Shown here one piece after another: positions 58,838 through 63,937 of a stretch of 64,000 nt of DNA. Position numbers and translations under genes: made by a program. The DNA is taken from positions 62,001 to 126,000 of IMG/VR virus record IMGVR_UViG_3300043570_001980; one strand, given 5' to 3'. Position 1 is the first letter of the stretch; each line of letters begins with the position of its first letter. Below the pieces are notes generated by a model. It was not told where the DNA came from. It worked only from the letters and a program-made list of their open reading frames with translations, and did no database searches.

Positions 58838-60753
<1,916 letters not shown>

Positions 60754-60756
60754 TCT

Positions 60757-60784
60757 AAAAGCCCGGACATTGTCCGGGCTTTTT
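60757..60784. terminator. Rho-independent (bidirectional) terminator after groEL
   Basis: AAAAGCCCGGAC-ATT-GTCCGGGCTTTT. Confidence 0.88.
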
Positions 60785-60794
60785 AACAAGAGTT

Positions 60795-60880
60795 ATTGAT
60801 TTTTTCTATTGTCGTTATTAAAACAATTTCAAGAAAAATCCATAAATCTGCTTGATTATATAGATATATAATATTATAAT
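60795..60880 (+). promoter_or_regulatory. OxyR-like site plus sigma70 promoter of ahpC
   Basis: ATTG-N7-CTAT-N7-ATTA at 60795; TTGATT-17 nt-TATAAT at 60852-60880. Confidence 0.5.
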
Positions 60881-60928
60881 AAACACTCAGTACAAACACT
60901 GAGTAACATTTTAACAAAGGAAAATAAC

Positions 60929-61489
60929 ATGAAAACAGTTGGCGATAAATTAACCCCATTTGCAGTAACAGGTGTCAAGCCAGGACAACCAGAAGATGCC
61001 TTCTATACAATTACAGAAAAATCATTTGAAGGCAAGTGGAAAGTAATTGTTTACTATCCAAAGGACTTTACATTTGTATGCCCTACAGAAATTGTAGCAT
61101 ATGACAAATTAGCAGGTGACTTTGCCGAGCGTGATGCAGTTTTACTCACAGGCTCGACAGACAACGAGTTCTGTAAGGTAGCATGGCAAAAGTCACACGA
61201 TGACTTGCGCAAGATTATACATCACCAGTTTGCTGATACTGCTCGTCACCAACCTGGCGAAGAACGTGGCGGTGTAAGTCTTATTGAGCAGTTGGGCGTG
61301 TTCTATGCTCCAGCAGGTGCCGCACTTCGTGCCACATTCATCGTTGACCCAGACAACGTTATCCAGCACGTTACTGTGAACAACTTGAATGTTGGTCGTA
61401 GCCCAGAAGAAACTCTGCGTGTGTTGGATGCGTTACAGACTGGCGAACTATGTGCCTGTAACCGTACCGTTGGCGGCGAGACACTATAA
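60929..61489 (+). CDS. ahpC: Peroxiredoxin AhpC
   Basis: YYPKDFTFVCPTE, GELCACN. Confidence 0.95.
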   Translation: MKTVGDKLTPFAVTGVKPGQPEDAFYTITEKSFEGKWKVIVYYPKDFTFVCPTEIVAYDKLAGDFAERDAVLLTGSTDNEFCKVAWQKSHDDLRKIIHHQFADTARHQPGEERGGVSLIEQLGVFYAPAGAALRATFIVDPDNVIQHVTVNNLNVGRSPEETLRVLDALQTGELCACNRTVGGETL

Positions 61490-61995
61490 TGGCATTTATT
61501 GACGCAATTAAAACTGCGTTGCCAGACTACGCCAAGGACACCAAGTTAAACCTTGATGCTGTTCTTGTGCGTAGCACATTGGATGCTGATGTGGCCATGG
61601 GTTGTGCTGTGGCCGCACTCGCCGCAACTGGTAACGGAAAGGTATTAGCTGTTATGTTAGCGGATCAACCAGTACATGCTGAATCAGCAATGACCGCCGC
61701 TTCAATTATGGCACAGAACAATGTATGGTATCCCTACGTTGAGATGGCTGACGATCCTGCTCTTAAAGGATTGCCAGCACAGTTACGCATGAATGCCATT
61801 GCCAGTCACGGTGGAACTACCAAGTCAAACTTTGAGGCATTTAGTTTAGCCGCAAGTATTGTGGGCAAGTGCCACTTCTGTGTGAAAGCGCACTACGAAA
61901 CACTCAAGCAAGAAGGATACACAGTAGAGCAATTACGTGATATTGGCCGTATTGCCAGTGTTATGAATTCGGTGGCCAAAGTTCTGAACAGCTAA
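61489..61995 (+). CDS. ahpD: Alkyl hydroperoxide reductase AhpD
   Basis: LPDYAKDTKLNL, MAQNNVWY, SIVGKCHFCVKAH. Confidence 0.93.
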   Translation: MAFIDAIKTALPDYAKDTKLNLDAVLVRSTLDADVAMGCAVAALAATGNGKVLAVMLADQPVHAESAMTAASIMAQNNVWYPYVEMADDPALKGLPAQLRMNAIASHGGTTKSNFEAFSLAASIVGKCHFCVKAHYETLKQEGYTVEQLRDIGRIASVMNSVAKVLNS

Positions 61996-63083
61996 TGCAC
62001 AAAAAACATCAAGTCATCAGATGTGAAGCATATATCTTTCAAGGAGATACTTTTTCCGTTGAACAGGCTGAAAATTTTCTTAAAGAGTACGACACAGACT
62101 GTGATACTATTTTAGCTAGTGTGTGGGAAGTACCTTATTATAAAATGTCTACTAACTGGAGACAAGGGTATAAAAACCTAGTACAAACAGCAAAAAGAAA
62201 ATTAAAAGGAAGAATTTTTGTTATACTTGATTCCTGGTATCAACCATATTACCAAGACTTGTTAGATCCAGCTGTTGATGATGTTTTGTTAATTGATTAT
62301 TTCTTGGTTAGAATCTATAACGAAGTTGTAGTTAAAAAACTATGCGATTTTAAAAAAATACCCGATGTAAAAAATCCATTTTTATTCTTAACTGGCAAAC
62401 CATCTAAACTCAACAGAACTCGATTGTTATATAAGTTACAACAGAAGAATTTGTTAGAAAACAGCATATGGTCGTTTTATCCAATTAAAGATAAAATTAA
62501 TCAAGAACATTCAACTGTGCCTGAAATAACAGTTGACGAATACATTGATTTTACAAACAAATATCAACGTCAACCAGATAGTGTTAAATTTAAACCGTCT
62601 GGCCACTCTTATTTTTTTCTTCCGGTACCTTACGACGTTAAACTTTATGATAGTACAGGTTTTTCAATTGTACCCGAAACTATATTTAATAATACAAATT
62701 CGTTTGATACTGTTTTTTTCACAGAAAAAACCTGGATTCCAATATTAAATAATCATGCTTTTATAATTGCTGGAATTCCTGGTGTACTCAAACAACTATC
62801 AACTATGGGGTTCAAAACCTTTGAAGAATATTTGCCAGTTAAATATGACAACATACTTAACCACGAACAACGATTAAATGCAATTGTTGAAAACGTGGAA
62901 TTTTTAGTTAATAACATCGATGCCCTAGAGAATGATTTAATTAACGATATCAAACACAATCATCAAAATTTAATAAAATTAGCTTGCAATAATGTTGATA
63001 ATATTCTCAATCTTGCCAAACAGCATCAATGGCAAATTAAACAGTTTGACGACCTAGTTAACACCGCTGATAAAATTCTATAA
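61995..63083 (+). CDS. Hypothetical protein, glycosyltransferase-like
   Basis: FLFLTGK...R, IVPET, FTEKTW, LSTMGFKTF pattern; AT-rich. Confidence 0.55.
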   Translation: MHKKHQVIRCEAYIFQGDTFSVEQAENFLKEYDTDCDTILASVWEVPYYKMSTNWRQGYKNLVQTAKRKLKGRIFVILDSWYQPYYQDLLDPAVDDVLLIDYFLVRIYNEVVVKKLCDFKKIPDVKNPFLFLTGKPSKLNRTRLLYKLQQKNLLENSIWSFYPIKDKINQEHSTVPEITVDEYIDFTNKYQRQPDSVKFKPSGHSYFFLPVPYDVKLYDSTGFSIVPETIFNNTNSFDTVFFTEKTWIPILNNHAFIIAGIPGVLKQLSTMGFKTFEEYLPVKYDNILNHEQRLNAIVENVEFLVNNIDALENDLINDIKHNHQNLIKLACNNVDNILNLAKQHQWQIKQFDDLVNTADKIL

Positions 63084-63114
63084 CAATTACAGATTATGGA
63101 TATATAATAGTACT

Positions 63115-63219
63115 ATGAACTATCAATCATTGTCCATGTACACCAAGTGTGACGCACGAGATTTCGTGAGTTACAACTATGAGCACATGTGCAATGCGGG
63201 TCTTGGGAAATCTAGATAA
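63115..63219 (+). CDS. Putative leader peptide (34 aa; not in ORF track)
   Basis: MNYQSLSMYTKCDARDFVSYNYEHMCNAGLGKSR; ATG 7 nt after TATAAT (63103). Confidence 0.45.
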   Translation: MNYQSLSMYTKCDARDFVSYNYEHMCNAGLGKSR

Positions 63220-63238
63220 CTAGAAAGTACTGCTAATA

Positions 63239-63269
63239 AAGACCCGCCAACTAGGCGGGTTTTCTTTTT
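63239..63269 (+). terminator. Rho-independent terminator with an overlapping antiterminator option
   Basis: AAGACCCGCC-AACTA-GGCGGGTTTT-CTTTTT; the 5' arm also pairs with GCGGGTCTT at 63196. Confidence 0.8.
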
Positions 63270-63367
63270 GTAGGTAGACCAGAATTGACAGATCTAGTAC
63301 AATAGAAACATGAAGGAAGCAATTCCGGGCAACAACAGAGTGTTGTAAAAATACAACAAACAAGTAG

Positions 63368-63434
63368 TTGACAAAAATTGCAAAGTATCATATAATTGAT
63401 GCATACGTTGAGAAATCAACAATGTTCTTTAACA
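63368..63434 (+). promoter_or_regulatory. Sigma70 consensus promoter followed by a boxB-like hairpin and rrn-type boxA
   Basis: TTGACA-17 nt-TATAAT; GTTGA-GAAA-TCAAC; TGTTCTTTAACA at 63423. Confidence 0.75.
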
Positions 63435-63487
63435 ATGTTAGAGTTTTTGTATAGTAGCCCGCAAGGGTTGCTATATTAAAATGTATT

Positions 63488-63668
63488 AAAGGTTACCTAC
63501 ACCGTTAGGGATCTACAGCGAGGACAGTGGGGCCGCCCACGCTCAAACTAGGTCTATGAAACCGGGCAGAAATGTCCAGAAAAGCGGCGGAGCATGTAGG
63601 CAGTAATGACCGTGCAGGCCTATACAAGACGGTTGTATAGGTAGACATAGATGCACAATGGTTCCTTT
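63488..63668 (+). ncRNA. Candidate multi-helix structured RNA upstream of tRNAs
   Basis: CCTACA/TGTAGG, GTGGG/CCCAC, GGGCA-GAAA-TGTCC, GTGCA/TGCAC, CCTATACAA/TTGTATAGG, AAAGG/CCTTT. Confidence 0.55.
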
Positions 63669-63693
63669 AGTATTTTTTAATATAGTAAATTTT

Positions 63694-63783
63694 GGAGCGG
63701 TGGCCGAACGGTAAGGCAGCGGATTGCTAATCCGTACAACGTGTTAAAGCGTTGACTGGGTTCGACTCCCAGTCGCTCCGCCA
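63694..63783 (+). tRNA. tRNA-Ser(GCT)
   Basis: GGAGCGG/TCGCTCC, loop TTGCTAA, long variable arm, GCCA end. Confidence 0.93.
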
Positions 63784-63789
63784 AGTTTT

Positions 63790-63854
63790 GAGAGTCACAT
63801 CGCCTGGATACTTCCTTTGGTAACAAAGCACTAGGTCCTGCAACCGTGGCTCTC
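63790..63854 (+). ncRNA. Candidate small structured RNA between tRNA genes
   Basis: GAGAGTCAC/GTGGCTCTC, CCTGG/CTAGG, CTTTG-GTAA-CAAAG. Confidence 0.45.
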
Positions 63855-63862
63855 CCTTATTT

Positions 63863-63937
63863 GCTCGATTCGTCTATCGGTTAGGACATGCGGTTTTCAT
63901 CCGCATAAGAGCGGTTCGACTCCGCTATCGAGTACCA
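63863..63937 (+). tRNA. tRNA-Glu(TTC)
   Basis: GCTCGAT/ATCGAGT, TGCGG-TTTTCAT-CCGCA, TTCGA, CCA. Confidence 0.93.

What the first reader, a model, noticed from the sequence alone, without database searches (positions are those of the whole stretch)
63103..63269. Leader-peptide attenuator-like switch upstream of the ncRNA/tRNA array
Seen: TATAAT, a leaderless 34-codon ORF (4 Tyr, 4 Ser, 3 Met, 3 Asn, 2 Cys), then a strong terminator. GCGGGTCTT (63196-63204, codons 28-30) is perfectly complementary to the terminator 5' arm AAGACCCGC (63239-63247), making the folds mutually exclusive. Known: this is the geometry of ribosome-mediated attenuation (thr, ilv, trp). Inference: a ribosome finishing the leader favours termination, while stalling from general tRNA loss favours read-through into tRNA genes, i.e. 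a translation-stress sensor. Caveats: no tandem control codons, no clear -35, and a separate strong promoter at 63368.
Basis: partly seen in the sequence, partly recalled or inferred. Interest (0 to 1): 0.75.

Follow-up and report, generated by a model that had tools for sequence, protein, structure and literature searches.

The report
Translation-gated terminator before phage tRNAs
At the head of a giant lake phage's tRNA gene array sits a tiny, conserved gene (promoter, 34-codon reading frame that starts at the first base of its mRNA, terminator) whose last codons can pair with the terminator, so transcription probably stops there only when a ribosome has read the tiny gene to its end.

Summary
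The unit (TATAAT, then ATG 6 nt later, a 34-codon ORF and a strong terminator) belongs to a family of about 50 distinct variants in freshwater jumbo phages. Wherever enough sequence is held (29 of 29), it lies 345-773 nt upstream of a co-directional tRNA array.

- **The ORF is translated.** It has 0 stops in 1021 codons, against 54 and 99 in the other frames. Indels are in frame, pN/pS is 0.4-0.6, and a peptide motif is shared.
- **The terminator is real.** Its stem shows compensatory changes.
- **The antiterminator pairing is conserved in the window's subfamily.** It gains 8-15 kcal/mol (0-1 of 100 shuffles do as well). The gain collapses when a ribosome is placed on the stop codon. The nucleotides are kept even where the reading frame has shifted.
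- **Three points count against a classical attenuator.** Half of the family lacks a significant antiterminator. No control codons exist. One or two consensus promoters lie between the terminator and the tRNAs.

Formal covariation for the antiterminator is weak, and I found no RNA evidence. Best reading: a leaderless micro-gene whose terminator is gated by translation, that is, an attenuator variant. The tRNA-loss sensor idea is untested.

The parts
63080..63108 (+). Promoter P1: weak -35 ATAACA (63080-63085), 17-nt spacer, -10 TATAAT (63103-63108)
   Evidence: scores it 10/12. Homologous promoters in relatives are TTGACT-17/18-TATAAT, 11/12. Sequence similarity to L007 starts 16 nt upstream of the -10.
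63115..63219 (+). Leaderless 34-codon ORF (MNYQSLSMYTKCDARDFVSYNYEHMCNAGLGKSR) with a TAA stop at 63217-63219
   Evidence: The ATG is 6 nt after the -10 and has no SD. The frame is open in all 33 first-found variants: 0 stops in 1021 codons, against 54 and 99 in 988 in the other frames. Indels are in frame and pN/pS is 0.4-0.6.
63149..63174 (+). Mid-ORF hairpin (GUGAC-G-CACGA / UCGUG-A-GUUAC)
   Evidence: Present in the MFE folds of the window and of L007. The three substitutions in L007 keep the pairing. Analogous mid-ORF hairpins occur in the other groups.
63196..63204 (+). Antiterminator 5' strand GCGGGUCUU (codons 28-30)
   Evidence: Perfect complement of 63239-63247. Gain is 8.4 kcal/mol, 0/100 shuffles. 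The homologous strand GG(U)CUUUG... is kept in all class I relatives.
63211..63224 (+). Stop hairpin UCUAG-AUAA-CUAGA with the UAA stop codon in its loop, nested inside the antiterminator helix
   Evidence: A hairpin that encloses or abuts the stop codon is seen in every group of the family.
63239..63269 (+). Intrinsic terminator T1: stem 63239-63248 / 63254-63263, loop AACUA, U-run. Its 5' arm 63239-63247 doubles as the antiterminator 3' strand.
   Evidence: Across 16 relatives 98.8% of cells are paired, with two compensatory pairs (CCCGCC/GGCGGG, CCCUGC/GCAGGG, CCCUCC/GGAGGG); 0/500 shuffles reach this.
63275..63303 (+). Promoter P2 (TAGACC-17-TACAAT) directly behind T1, followed 6 nt later by ATG 63310
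   Evidence: scores it 9/12. A homologous promoter sits at the same place in all family members.
63368..63396 (+). Promoter P3, TTGACA-17-TATAAT (12/12)
63403..63693 (+). Structured non-coding RNA between P3 and the first tRNA (context; the first downstream product)
   Evidence: Fold z = -4.1. No Rfam family matches. Helices are kept through different sequence in L007. Metatranscriptome contigs cover it.
63694..63937 (+). Start of the tRNA array: tRNA-Ser(GCU) 63694-63783 and tRNA-Glu(UUC) 63863-63937. The array continues beyond the window with Tyr, Asp, Met, Asn, Thr, Arg, Ala, Lys, Met, Gln, Ile.

Best explanation
This is a self-contained early transcription unit that marks the head of the phage's main tRNA array. 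A sigma-70-type promoter starts transcription at or next to the A of an AUG. The resulting leaderless mRNA is translated into a peptide of about 30 residues (34 here), and an intrinsic terminator ends the transcript about 155 nt later.

In the subfamily that includes the window, the last sense codons of the ORF (GCGGGUCUU here; GG(U)CUUUG(UUGA) in relatives) are complementary to the 5' arm and flank of the terminator. If no ribosome has reached the end of the ORF when RNA polymerase makes the terminator, this helix forms first. It encloses a small hairpin that holds the stop codon. It leaves the terminator with little or no net driving force, so polymerase reads on through P2/P3 into the non-coding RNA and the tRNA genes. 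If a ribosome has reached the stop codon, it covers or has just melted that strand, the terminator forms and the transcript ends.

The unit is thus a translation-gated terminator: an attenuator without control codons. It adds P1-driven transcription to the tRNA array when translation of the leader lags.

Shown: the promoter-ATG geometry, translation of the ORF (comparative evidence), the terminator, conservation and energetics of the alternative pairing, and the linkage to tRNA arrays.

Inferred: the transcription start at the AUG, the effect of the ribosome on termination, and any physiological signal.
For: **A family exists.** Four collection scans (the terminator with and without its loop, P1 plus ATG, and the helix itself) recovered about 50 distinct variants.

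**Position.** A co-directional tRNA array follows at +345 to +773 in 29 of 29 first-found variants with enough downstream DNA. The upstream neighbours differ: there is a 2.2-kb insertion in L007 and L008, where the gene just upstream is on the other strand.

**Translation.**
- 0 stops in 1021 codons, against 54 and 99 in 988 in the other frames.
- In-frame indels and pN/pS of 0.40-0.64 in 7 groups.
- ATG fixed 5-6 nt after TATAAT; no SD, although the phage's other genes have one.

**Terminator.** It covaries.

**Antiterminator.**
- It gains 7.7-15.1 kcal/mol in all 16 first-found class I members, with 0-1 of 100 shuffles as good.
- With a ribosome footprint on the stop codon the gain falls to 0.1-2 (3.8 in L087; 4.6-5.7 in the window group). 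It is unchanged with a ribosome at codon 15.
- The net drive for the terminator is only -7.7 to +1.4 kcal/mol in class I, against -6.9 to -14.2 in class II.

**Nucleotide-level constraint on the 5' strand.**
- The Leu codon of the G-L motif is CTT in 16 of 17 cases. CTT is used at 2 of 85 other Leu positions and makes up 15.8% of Leu codons in long genes of the window.
- L080 (-1 nt) and L139 (+1 nt) keep GGTCTTTG in a different reading frame.
- The window group keeps a 9-bp helix in a shifted register.
- Isolated compensatory changes occur (UGA/UCA to UAA/UUA; UGU-A to UGC-G).

**No other obstacle.** No further terminator lies between T1 and the tRNAs in the window.
Against: - **Class II lacks the antiterminator.** Seventeen of the 33 first-found variants (groups A and B) have the same promoter, ORF, stop hairpin, terminator and position but no significant antiterminator: gain 0.6-5.4 kcal/mol, within the shuffle range. 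The unit's basic role therefore does not need the switch.
- **Formal covariation is weak.** The scores are 12/500 on 16 sequences and 92/500 on 33. The core 8-9 pairs never vary, and part of that set was found with the helix itself as the search pattern.
- **One internal pair is not kept.** The Gly third position (U, G or A) is a mismatch in 5 of 16.
- **Promoters lie downstream.** P2 follows the terminator in every member and the window has a 12/12 promoter P3, so the tRNAs do not depend on read-through.
- **The peptide is conserved.** The motif is Y-E-x-x-C-x-x-G-L in the window and AYE[RSH]DCxxGLC in relatives. This fits a functional product as well as a leader.
- **Attenuator features are missing.** There are no tandem control codons and no anti-antiterminator.
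- **No transcript evidence.** Metatranscriptome contigs do not cover the unit.
- **Window-specific weaknesses.** In the window group a ribosome at the stop codon masks only 3 of the 9 nt of the strand, and the window's own -35 is poor.
Confidence: 0.5

Rival explanations
1. An autonomous micro-protein gene and nothing more. The roughly 30-residue peptide (conserved acidic/Tyr block, Cys and G-L motif) is the functional product of an early promoter. T1 is simply its terminator and insulates P2/P3. The complementarity between the ORF end and T1 has no regulatory effect on downstream genes. It would be a by-product of the conserved G-L-C codons resembling the terminator's own 3' arm (GGGUCUUU against GGGUUUUU), or it would only tune the 3' end of the gene's own mRNA.
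For: - Peptide motif, in-frame indels and pN/pS below 1.
- Class II members keep everything except a significant antiterminator.
- Promoters lie behind T1 in all members.
- The Gly wobble position varies freely, as a synonymous site would.
- Covariation for the helix is not significant.
Against: - Synonymous-site invariance of the Leu codon: CTT 16/17, against 2/85 elsewhere.
- Two members keep the nucleotides while the reading frame, and hence the G-L-C peptide motif, is lost (L080, L139).
- The helix is kept in another register in the window group.
- The two folds are near energetic balance only in class I.
- pN/pS of 0.4-0.6 is weak constraint for a functional 30-mer.
- No family match in Pfam or PHROGs, and no usable match in the ESM Atlas.
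Confidence: 0.33
2. A specific tRNA-supply feedback. The conserved Tyr/Glu/Asp codons just upstream of the antiterminator strand act as control codons. When charged tRNA-Glu, -Tyr or -Asp run low (starvation, or host anticodon nucleases), the ribosome stalls there and the antiterminator forms. P1 transcription then runs into an array that begins with exactly these tRNAs.
For: - The arrays begin Glu-Tyr-Asp or Glu-Asp in nearly all members; the window has Ser-Glu-Tyr-Asp.
- The conserved block is Y-E-x-D in class I, LDYD or DY..AY in class II, and Y-N-Y-E in the window.
- It lies 4-8 codons before the helix strand. In the energetic model a ribosome held upstream (codon 15) leaves the helix intact.
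Against: - The match was noticed post hoc. About 7 residue types are conserved and 3 coincide, roughly 3% by chance.
- Overall E+D+Y content (16-21%) is not enriched, and there are no tandem repeats of a codon.
- Class II has the same residues but no switch.
- Downstream promoters make the feedback partial at best.
Confidence: 0.1
3. A non-coding small RNA of about 155 nt. Its open frame would be incidental and its variable 5' part would pair with a target.
For: - Strong fold (z = -4.0).
- Conserved hairpins, including synonymous compensatory changes inside the ORF in group B (L079 against L089).
- A conserved terminator and U-tail, as in Hfq-type sRNAs.
Against: - 0 stops in 1021 codons in one frame only, and indels that keep the frame.
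- The ATG is fixed at the predicted start even where 1 nt is inserted.
- Amino-acid motifs persist across saturated nucleotide divergence.
- The 5' part, which would be the seed, is the least conserved part.
Confidence: 0.04
4. Just the terminator of the upstream 362-codon gene, with a chance ORF and a chance -10 in the intergenic spacer.
For: In the window the unit follows the 362-codon gene (stop at 63083) and P1 has a poor -35.
Against: - In L007 and L008 a 2.2-kb insertion with minus-strand genes separates the two, and similarity begins 16 nt before the -10.
- Relatives have various upstream neighbours but the same unit, with TTGACT-17-TATAAT.
Confidence: 0.02

Closest known systems
Ribosome-mediated transcription attenuators of amino-acid operons (trpL, thrL, hisL, pheL, ilvL, leuL)
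   Same: A short translated ORF precedes an intrinsic terminator. An upstream strand inside or next to the ORF can pair with the terminator's 5' arm, so the two folds exclude each other. The position of the ribosome would decide which forms.
   Different: - No run of control codons.
- No 1:2 anti-antiterminator, so the default without translation is read-through rather than termination.
- The mRNA is leaderless.
- The downstream genes are RNAs (ncRNA and tRNAs) and have promoters of their own.
- The peptide is conserved.
- No Rfam leader model matches.

The features of the known systems are from my own knowledge of the trp and his paradigms; PMC1183508 gives the general scheme.
Coupling-sensing attenuators without control codons (pyrBI leader, pyrE behind rph) in enterobacteria
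   Same: The output depends on how closely a ribosome follows RNA polymerase, not on a particular amino acid. The distance from stop codon to terminator is constrained (here 18-22 nt in 28 of 33 variants).
   Different: In pyrBI and pyrE a closely following ribosome physically prevents the terminator hairpin, so tight coupling gives read-through. Here the ORF ends before the hairpin and the ribosome would remove an antiterminator, so tight coupling gives termination, which is the opposite sign. This comparison is from my own knowledge and was not tested.
Leaderless short ORFs acting as attenuators in mycobacteria (polycysteine sORFs), and leaderless phage mRNAs such as lambda cI from PRM
   Same: The start codon is at the 5' end of the transcript, there is no Shine-Dalgarno motif, and the -10 element lies 6-7 nt upstream of the ATG.
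   Different: The mycobacterial elements carry runs of Cys codons and act on downstream protein genes. Lambda cI is a full-length protein gene. The transcription start was not mapped here. This comparison is from my own knowledge.
Small ORFs with their own promoters and terminators inside phage tRNA regions (for example the T5 tRNA region)
   Same: Promoter, short ORF and terminator modules are interspersed with tRNA genes. A second such module lies inside this array (L002 about 1888-2115).
   Different: No sequence similarity was found (one search returned only tRNA matches). I know of no described alternative pairing or leaderless start for those modules. This comparison is recalled from memory and was not verified with the paper tools.

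Membership tests
Leader-peptide (ribosome-mediated) transcription attenuator | Short translated ORF in the transcript upstream of the terminator | tested here: met
   34 codons. The frame is kept in all variants, with in-frame indels and pN/pS of 0.4-0.6. Translation is inferred from comparison, not observed.
Leader-peptide (ribosome-mediated) transcription attenuator | Intrinsic terminator between the leader ORF and the downstream genes | tested here: met
   10-bp stem plus U-run. Compensatory changes across relatives; 0/500 shuffles.
Leader-peptide (ribosome-mediated) transcription attenuator | Antiterminator helix mutually exclusive with the terminator | tested here: met
   Met for the window and all class I relatives: gain 7.7-15 kcal/mol, 0-1/100 shuffles, near balance with the terminator. 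Not met in class II relatives. Covariation is inconclusive.
Leader-peptide (ribosome-mediated) transcription attenuator | Tandem regulatory codons cognate to the controlled pathway | tested here: not met
   No codon runs in any of about 50 peptides. There is only a conserved Y/E/D-containing block.
Leader-peptide (ribosome-mediated) transcription attenuator | Anti-antiterminator (1:2) or pause hairpin that sequesters the antiterminator strand when the leader is not translated | tested here: not met
   In the pre-terminator MFE of every class I member the strand pairs with the terminator arm. The mid-ORF hairpin does not overlap it.
Leader-peptide (ribosome-mediated) transcription attenuator | Downstream genes depend on read-through (no promoter in between) | tested here: not met
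   The P2 homolog follows the terminator in all members, and P3 is 12/12 in the window.
Leader-peptide (ribosome-mediated) transcription attenuator | Ribosome position changes termination efficiency | not testable with these tools
   Only modelled: masking a footprint at the stop codon removes the antiterminator gain, while masking at codon 15 does not.
Rfam leader / cis-regulatory families | Match to a curated covariance model | tested here: not met
   Nothing reached the gathering score. The only leader hit is Leu_leader on the minus strand, E = 0.82.
Leaderless mRNA | Transcription starts at (or within 1-2 nt of) the start codon; no Shine-Dalgarno | tested here: inconclusive
   The -10 to ATG spacing is 5-6 nt in all variants, and the ATG is kept even where 1 nt is inserted. 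There is no SD, although other genes of the phage have one. The 5' end was not mapped, and there was no RNA coverage.
Autonomous phage micro-protein gene | Own promoter, ORF under purifying selection, own terminator, conserved peptide motif | tested here: met
   No known protein family matches.

The most novel reading that the evidence does not exclude
A phage-encoded sensor of translation supply. The sensor is a leaderless leader peptide whose conserved Tyr-Glu-x-Asp block reports the availability of the very tRNAs (Glu, Tyr, Asp) that head the array. When these are depleted, by starvation or by host anticodon nucleases, the near-consensus promoter P1 is switched from making a 155-nt dead-end mRNA to transcribing the ncRNA/tRNA array. 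That would be attenuation applied to tRNA genes themselves.
Probability: 0.1. Interest if true: 0.88.

Novelty: new variant of a known kind. Interest (0 to 1): 0.6.

Why it matters
Phage tRNA arrays are usually treated as constitutive cargo that compensates for codon usage or for host tRNA cleavage, and I know of no described regulation for them.

Here a conserved unit sits at the head of the array in a whole clade of 340-kb lake phages, and this exact variant occurs in at least 19 lake metagenome runs. The unit has the geometry of an attenuator, but with three unusual traits: a leaderless start, no control codons, and RNA genes as the downstream target.

If the gate works, it would be a simple read-out of whether ribosomes are keeping up, placed in front of the genes that supply translation. 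It would also give a compact natural part, about 170 bp, for translation-dependent termination.

If the gate does not work, the family is still a new, widespread leaderless micro-protein linked to tRNA arrays.

Within one family there are natural 'switch' and 'no-switch' versions (class I and class II). That makes the question directly testable by swapping 10-nt segments.

Tried and rejected
- **Rfam**, gathering and E-value modes: no family for the unit or for the neighbouring ncRNAs.
- **GenBank phages by DNA:** only tRNA matches.
- **Cultured relatives by DNA polymerase:** distant. The closest are Sinorhizobium phage Phosso at 51%, Agrobacterium phage Atu_ph07 at 46% and Rak2-like phages at about 43%. 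No cultured model was found, and I did not search those genomes for the unit.
- **Pfam, PHROGs and the ESM Atlas for the peptides:** nothing usable.
- **Metatranscriptomes:**
  - Four runs were laid on L002. Contigs cover the ncRNAs and tRNAs of relatives but not the ORF unit (L002 223-444).
  - A second run search with the unit alone found 19 DNA runs with all words, and a single RNA run with 17% of the words.
  - So there is no evidence for or against the transcript, its ends or read-through.
- **Covariation for the antiterminator:** not significant. The core is invariant and part of the set was collected with the helix as bait. RNAalifold on 28 full units returns only the terminator.
- **Codon enrichment:** Tyr/Asn/His/Asp or Glu/Tyr/Asp shares are 16-29% and not clearly above proteome levels (own count).
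- **'Chance ORF' and 'only the upstream gene's terminator':** rejected by the comparative data.
- **Literature:** two searches found no description of such an element before phage tRNA arrays. That is absence in the held library only.

Full report
**1. Where the window lies**

The window is bases 62692-126691 of a 128.8-kb IMG/VR virus record rated 35% complete. Near-identical and 87-94% identical relatives are records of 342 to 345 kb. The window encodes a T4-type family B DNA polymerase, a Lon-like protease, GroEL and AhpC/AhpD-like proteins. By polymerase the nearest cultured phages are distant: Sinorhizobium phage Phosso 51%, Agrobacterium phage Atu_ph07 46%, Rak2-like phages about 43%. 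The exact sequence of the finding occurs in at least 19 lake-water metagenome runs. The finding sits between a 362-codon gene (stop at 63083) and a tRNA array that starts at 63694 and runs to the end of the record, with 13 tRNAs in the 3.3 kb fetched.

**2. The observation**

- TATAAT at 63103-63108, then the ATG at 63115 after a 6-nt spacer.
- 34 codons and a TAA stop (63217-63219).
- GCGGGTCTT at 63196-63204, which is codons 28-30.
- Its perfect complement at 63239-63247, which is the 5' arm of a 10-bp terminator stem followed by a U-run.
- A 12/12 consensus promoter at 63368-63396.

The 9-mer occurs three times in the window on both strands, against 0.15 expected. The small ORF has no Shine-Dalgarno motif, whereas most genes of the window have AGGA/GGAG 6-10 nt before the start. 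The transcript 63115-63272 folds with z = -4.0.

**3. It is a family**

In L007 and L008, where the upstream protein is 94% identical, similarity stops at the stop codon of the 362-codon gene. It resumes 2.2 kb further on, 16 nt before the TATAAT. The inserted DNA carries minus-strand genes. The unit therefore does not belong to the upstream gene and must bring its own promoter.

Scans with the terminator (with and without its loop), with the conserved P1-ATG string and with the helix pattern recovered about 50 distinct variants from viral and metagenome contigs. All of them share:
- TTGACT, 17 or 18 nt, (CA)TATATAAT, 5-6 nt, ATG.
- An ORF of 25-36 codons.
- A stop codon 18-22 nt before the terminator stem in 28 of the 33 first-found variants, and 34 nt in three.
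- A GC-rich terminator.
- Directly behind it a second promoter, P2.

In all 29 first-found variants with enough downstream DNA, a co-directional tRNA array begins 345-773 nt after the ATG, nearly always with tRNA-Glu followed by Tyr and/or Asp. Each complete genome searched holds one copy.

**4. The ORF is translated**

Across the first 33 variants the ATG frame has no stop in 1021 codons. The other two frames have 54 and 99 stops in 988 codons. Length differences within groups are in whole codons, for example +1 codon in L040, +3 and +1 in L062 and L071, and +1 in L078 and L084. In seven groups pN/pS is 0.40-0.64. Where 1 nt is inserted after the -10, the ATG is still kept.

The peptides share motifs across saturated nucleotide divergence...AYE[RSH]DCxxGLC(xCS) in most class I members...YNYEHMCNAGLGKSR in the window group, and ...EALDYDLSGPSDI and ...REALAYxNSGSSGT in groups A and B. 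No protein family matches. This is comparative evidence; the peptide was not observed.

**5. The terminator is real**

Across 16 relatives 98.8% of cells are paired. Two stem positions change on both sides (CCCGCC/GGCGGG, CCCUGC/GCAGGG, CCCUCC/GGAGGG). No shuffle of 500 reaches the observed values.

**6. The alternative pairing**

I folded each transcript up to the terminator loop, that is, before the 3' arm exists. I then measured how much ensemble free energy is lost when the 5' arm is forbidden to pair.

- **Class I.** In the window group and in every member with the G-L-C ending (16 first-found variants), the gain is 7.7-15.1 kcal/mol, and 0 or 1 of 100 dinucleotide shuffles do as well.
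- **Class II.** In groups A and B (17 variants) the gain is 0.6-5.4 kcal/mol and lies within the shuffle range.

The class I helix has 9-13 bp. It encloses a small hairpin that holds the stop codon. That hairpin is present in class II as well, where it stands alone next to the terminator.

Masking a ribosome footprint with the stop codon in the A site reduces the gain to 0.1-2 kcal/mol, with 3.8 in L087 and 4.6-5.7 in the window group, whose ORF runs four codons further. Masking a ribosome at codon 15 leaves the gain unchanged. At the moment of decision the terminator is favoured over the alternative by only -7.7 to +1.4 kcal/mol in class I, against -6.9 to -14.2 in class II. It holds for a whole subfamily.

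**7. Is the helix selected, or a by-product of the G-L-C codons?**

Formal covariation is weak. The core pairs never vary. The covariation score is reached by 12 of 500 shuffles on 16 sequences and by 92 of 500 on 33, and 17 of those 33 were collected with the helix as bait. RNAalifold keeps only the terminator. One internal pair is a mismatch in 5 of 16: it is the third position of the Gly codon (U, G or A), which behaves as a synonymous site.

Four observations point to a constraint on the nucleotides rather than on the peptide:
- **(a) Codon choice.** The Leu codon of the motif is CTT in 16 of 17 cases. CTT is used at 2 of 85 other Leu positions of these ORFs and makes up 15.8% of Leu codons in long genes of the window.
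- **(b) Frame shifts.** L080 (1 nt shorter) and L139 (1 nt longer) read GGTCTTTG in another frame. They lose G-L-C but keep the nucleotides and the helix.
- **(c) Register shift.** The window group has lost the UUUG part and instead pairs GCG with CGC, which keeps 9 bp.
- **(d) Compensatory changes.** Stop codon UGA with partner UCA becomes UAA with UUA (L032 and L141 against L129 and L153). UGU-A becomes UGC-G (L073 against L091). C-G becomes G-U where the arm is CCCU.

I rate the helix as probably selected, but not proven.

**8. What argues against a classical attenuator**

- There are no runs of a codon.
- No upstream segment sequesters the antiterminator strand, so the default without translation is read-through.
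- Class II shows that the unit exists and keeps its place without a switch.
- P2 follows the terminator everywhere, and the window adds a perfect promoter P3 104 nt behind the terminator. In many relatives P1 (11/12) is closer to consensus than P2 (9-10/12), so read-through could still add substantially. In the window itself P1 has a poor -35.
- For transcripts that enter from the 362-codon gene the ATG is internal and has no SD. On the model these transcripts would not be translated here and would pass T1. This is an inference only.

**9. Transcript evidence**

Contigs of three lake or river metatranscriptomes and one run of unknown kind were laid on L002. They cover the ncRNA behind P3 (L002 674-808, depth 46 in X1), a second ncRNA behind tRNA-Tyr and many tRNAs, mostly at 90-95% identity and so from relatives. 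Nothing covers L002 223-444, the ORF unit. Contigs show presence only, so this is inconclusive. A search with the unit alone found one RNA run holding 3 of 18 sampled words.

**10. Conclusion**

The element is best described as a leaderless micro-gene at the head of the tRNA array. In this subfamily its terminator is built to depend on a ribosome reaching the end of the ORF. It works like an attenuator of the coupling-sensing kind but fails several membership criteria of the leader-peptide attenuators.

The rival that it is only a micro-protein gene remains serious (about one in three). The specific tRNA-loss sensor is an attractive but untested extension. The one lead for it is that the conserved Tyr-Glu-x-Asp block lies 4-8 codons before the helix strand while the arrays begin with tRNA-Glu, -Tyr and -Asp. 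That match was noticed post hoc.

I found no description of such an element in two literature searches.

Noticed in passing
window 63403-63693 (= L002 595-885): A structured non-coding RNA of about 290 nt lies between the consensus promoter P3 and tRNA-Ser. Its fold z is -4.1 and no Rfam family matches. In L007 an 18-nt insertion and several stretches of different sequence keep the helices. A 135-nt metatranscriptome contig (run X1, depth 46) covers L002 674-808.
   Followed up: partly
L002 1222-1443 (beyond the window end, behind tRNA-Tyr): A second GC-rich non-coding stretch inside the array has the highest word depth of the non-tRNA parts in the RNA runs. The only Rfam hint is tmRNA_permuted at 20 bits, E = 0.25, which is not significant.
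   Followed up: no
window 63333-63360; L002 about 1840-1870 and 2041-2070: A three-part motif ACAACA-GAG-TGTTGT-AAAAA-TACAACA is repeated. The middle part can pair with either flank, giving two mutually exclusive hairpins. Two copies lie just upstream of promoters, and one directly follows tRNA-Met. A similar CAACA/TGTTG/CAACA motif precedes P3 in L044-type relatives. It could be an operator or an RNA processing or switch element.
   Followed up: no
window 63298-63348: P2 repeats the P1 layout: TACAAT, a 6-nt spacer, ATG, then a 12-codon ORF (MKEAIPGNNRVL) whose stop codon lies inside the three-part motif. It may be a second leaderless mini-ORF. The region is nearly identical in L007, so conservation could not be judged.
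   Followed up: no
L002 about 1888-2115: A second promoter, small ORF and terminator module lies inside the tRNA array: TTGACT-17-TACAAT, an ORF of about 44 codons ending in the three-part motif, then a GC-rich terminator.
   Followed up: no
window 59134-61995: GroEL (539 aa), an AhpC-type peroxiredoxin (186 aa) and an AhpD-like protein (168 aa) are encoded in a row in a phage genome. They are probably auxiliary host-like genes.
   Followed up: no
L062 (tRNA array of a class II relative): ARAGORN calls a tRNA with anticodon CTA (an amber-reading tRNA) in the array. Among the 33 first-found small ORFs, whose stop codons are listed, the stop is always TAA or TGA and never TAG. All work here used table 11.
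   Followed up: no
L007/L008 7090-9270, against window 63084: A 2.2-kb insertion with three or four minus-strand genes lies exactly between the 362-codon gene and the unit. The junction is 16 nt upstream of the -10, which explains the window's poor -35.
   Followed up: partly
family-wide, about 12-16 nt before the terminator (window 63227-63233): A conserved GTACTAC/GTACTGC motif forms the 3' strand of the hairpin that holds the stop codon. In group B it covaries with the ORF's last codons (AGU..ACU, AGU..AUU, AAU..AUU). The function of a hairpin over the stop codon is unexplained, as is the near-constant 18-22 nt distance from stop to terminator.
   Followed up: partly
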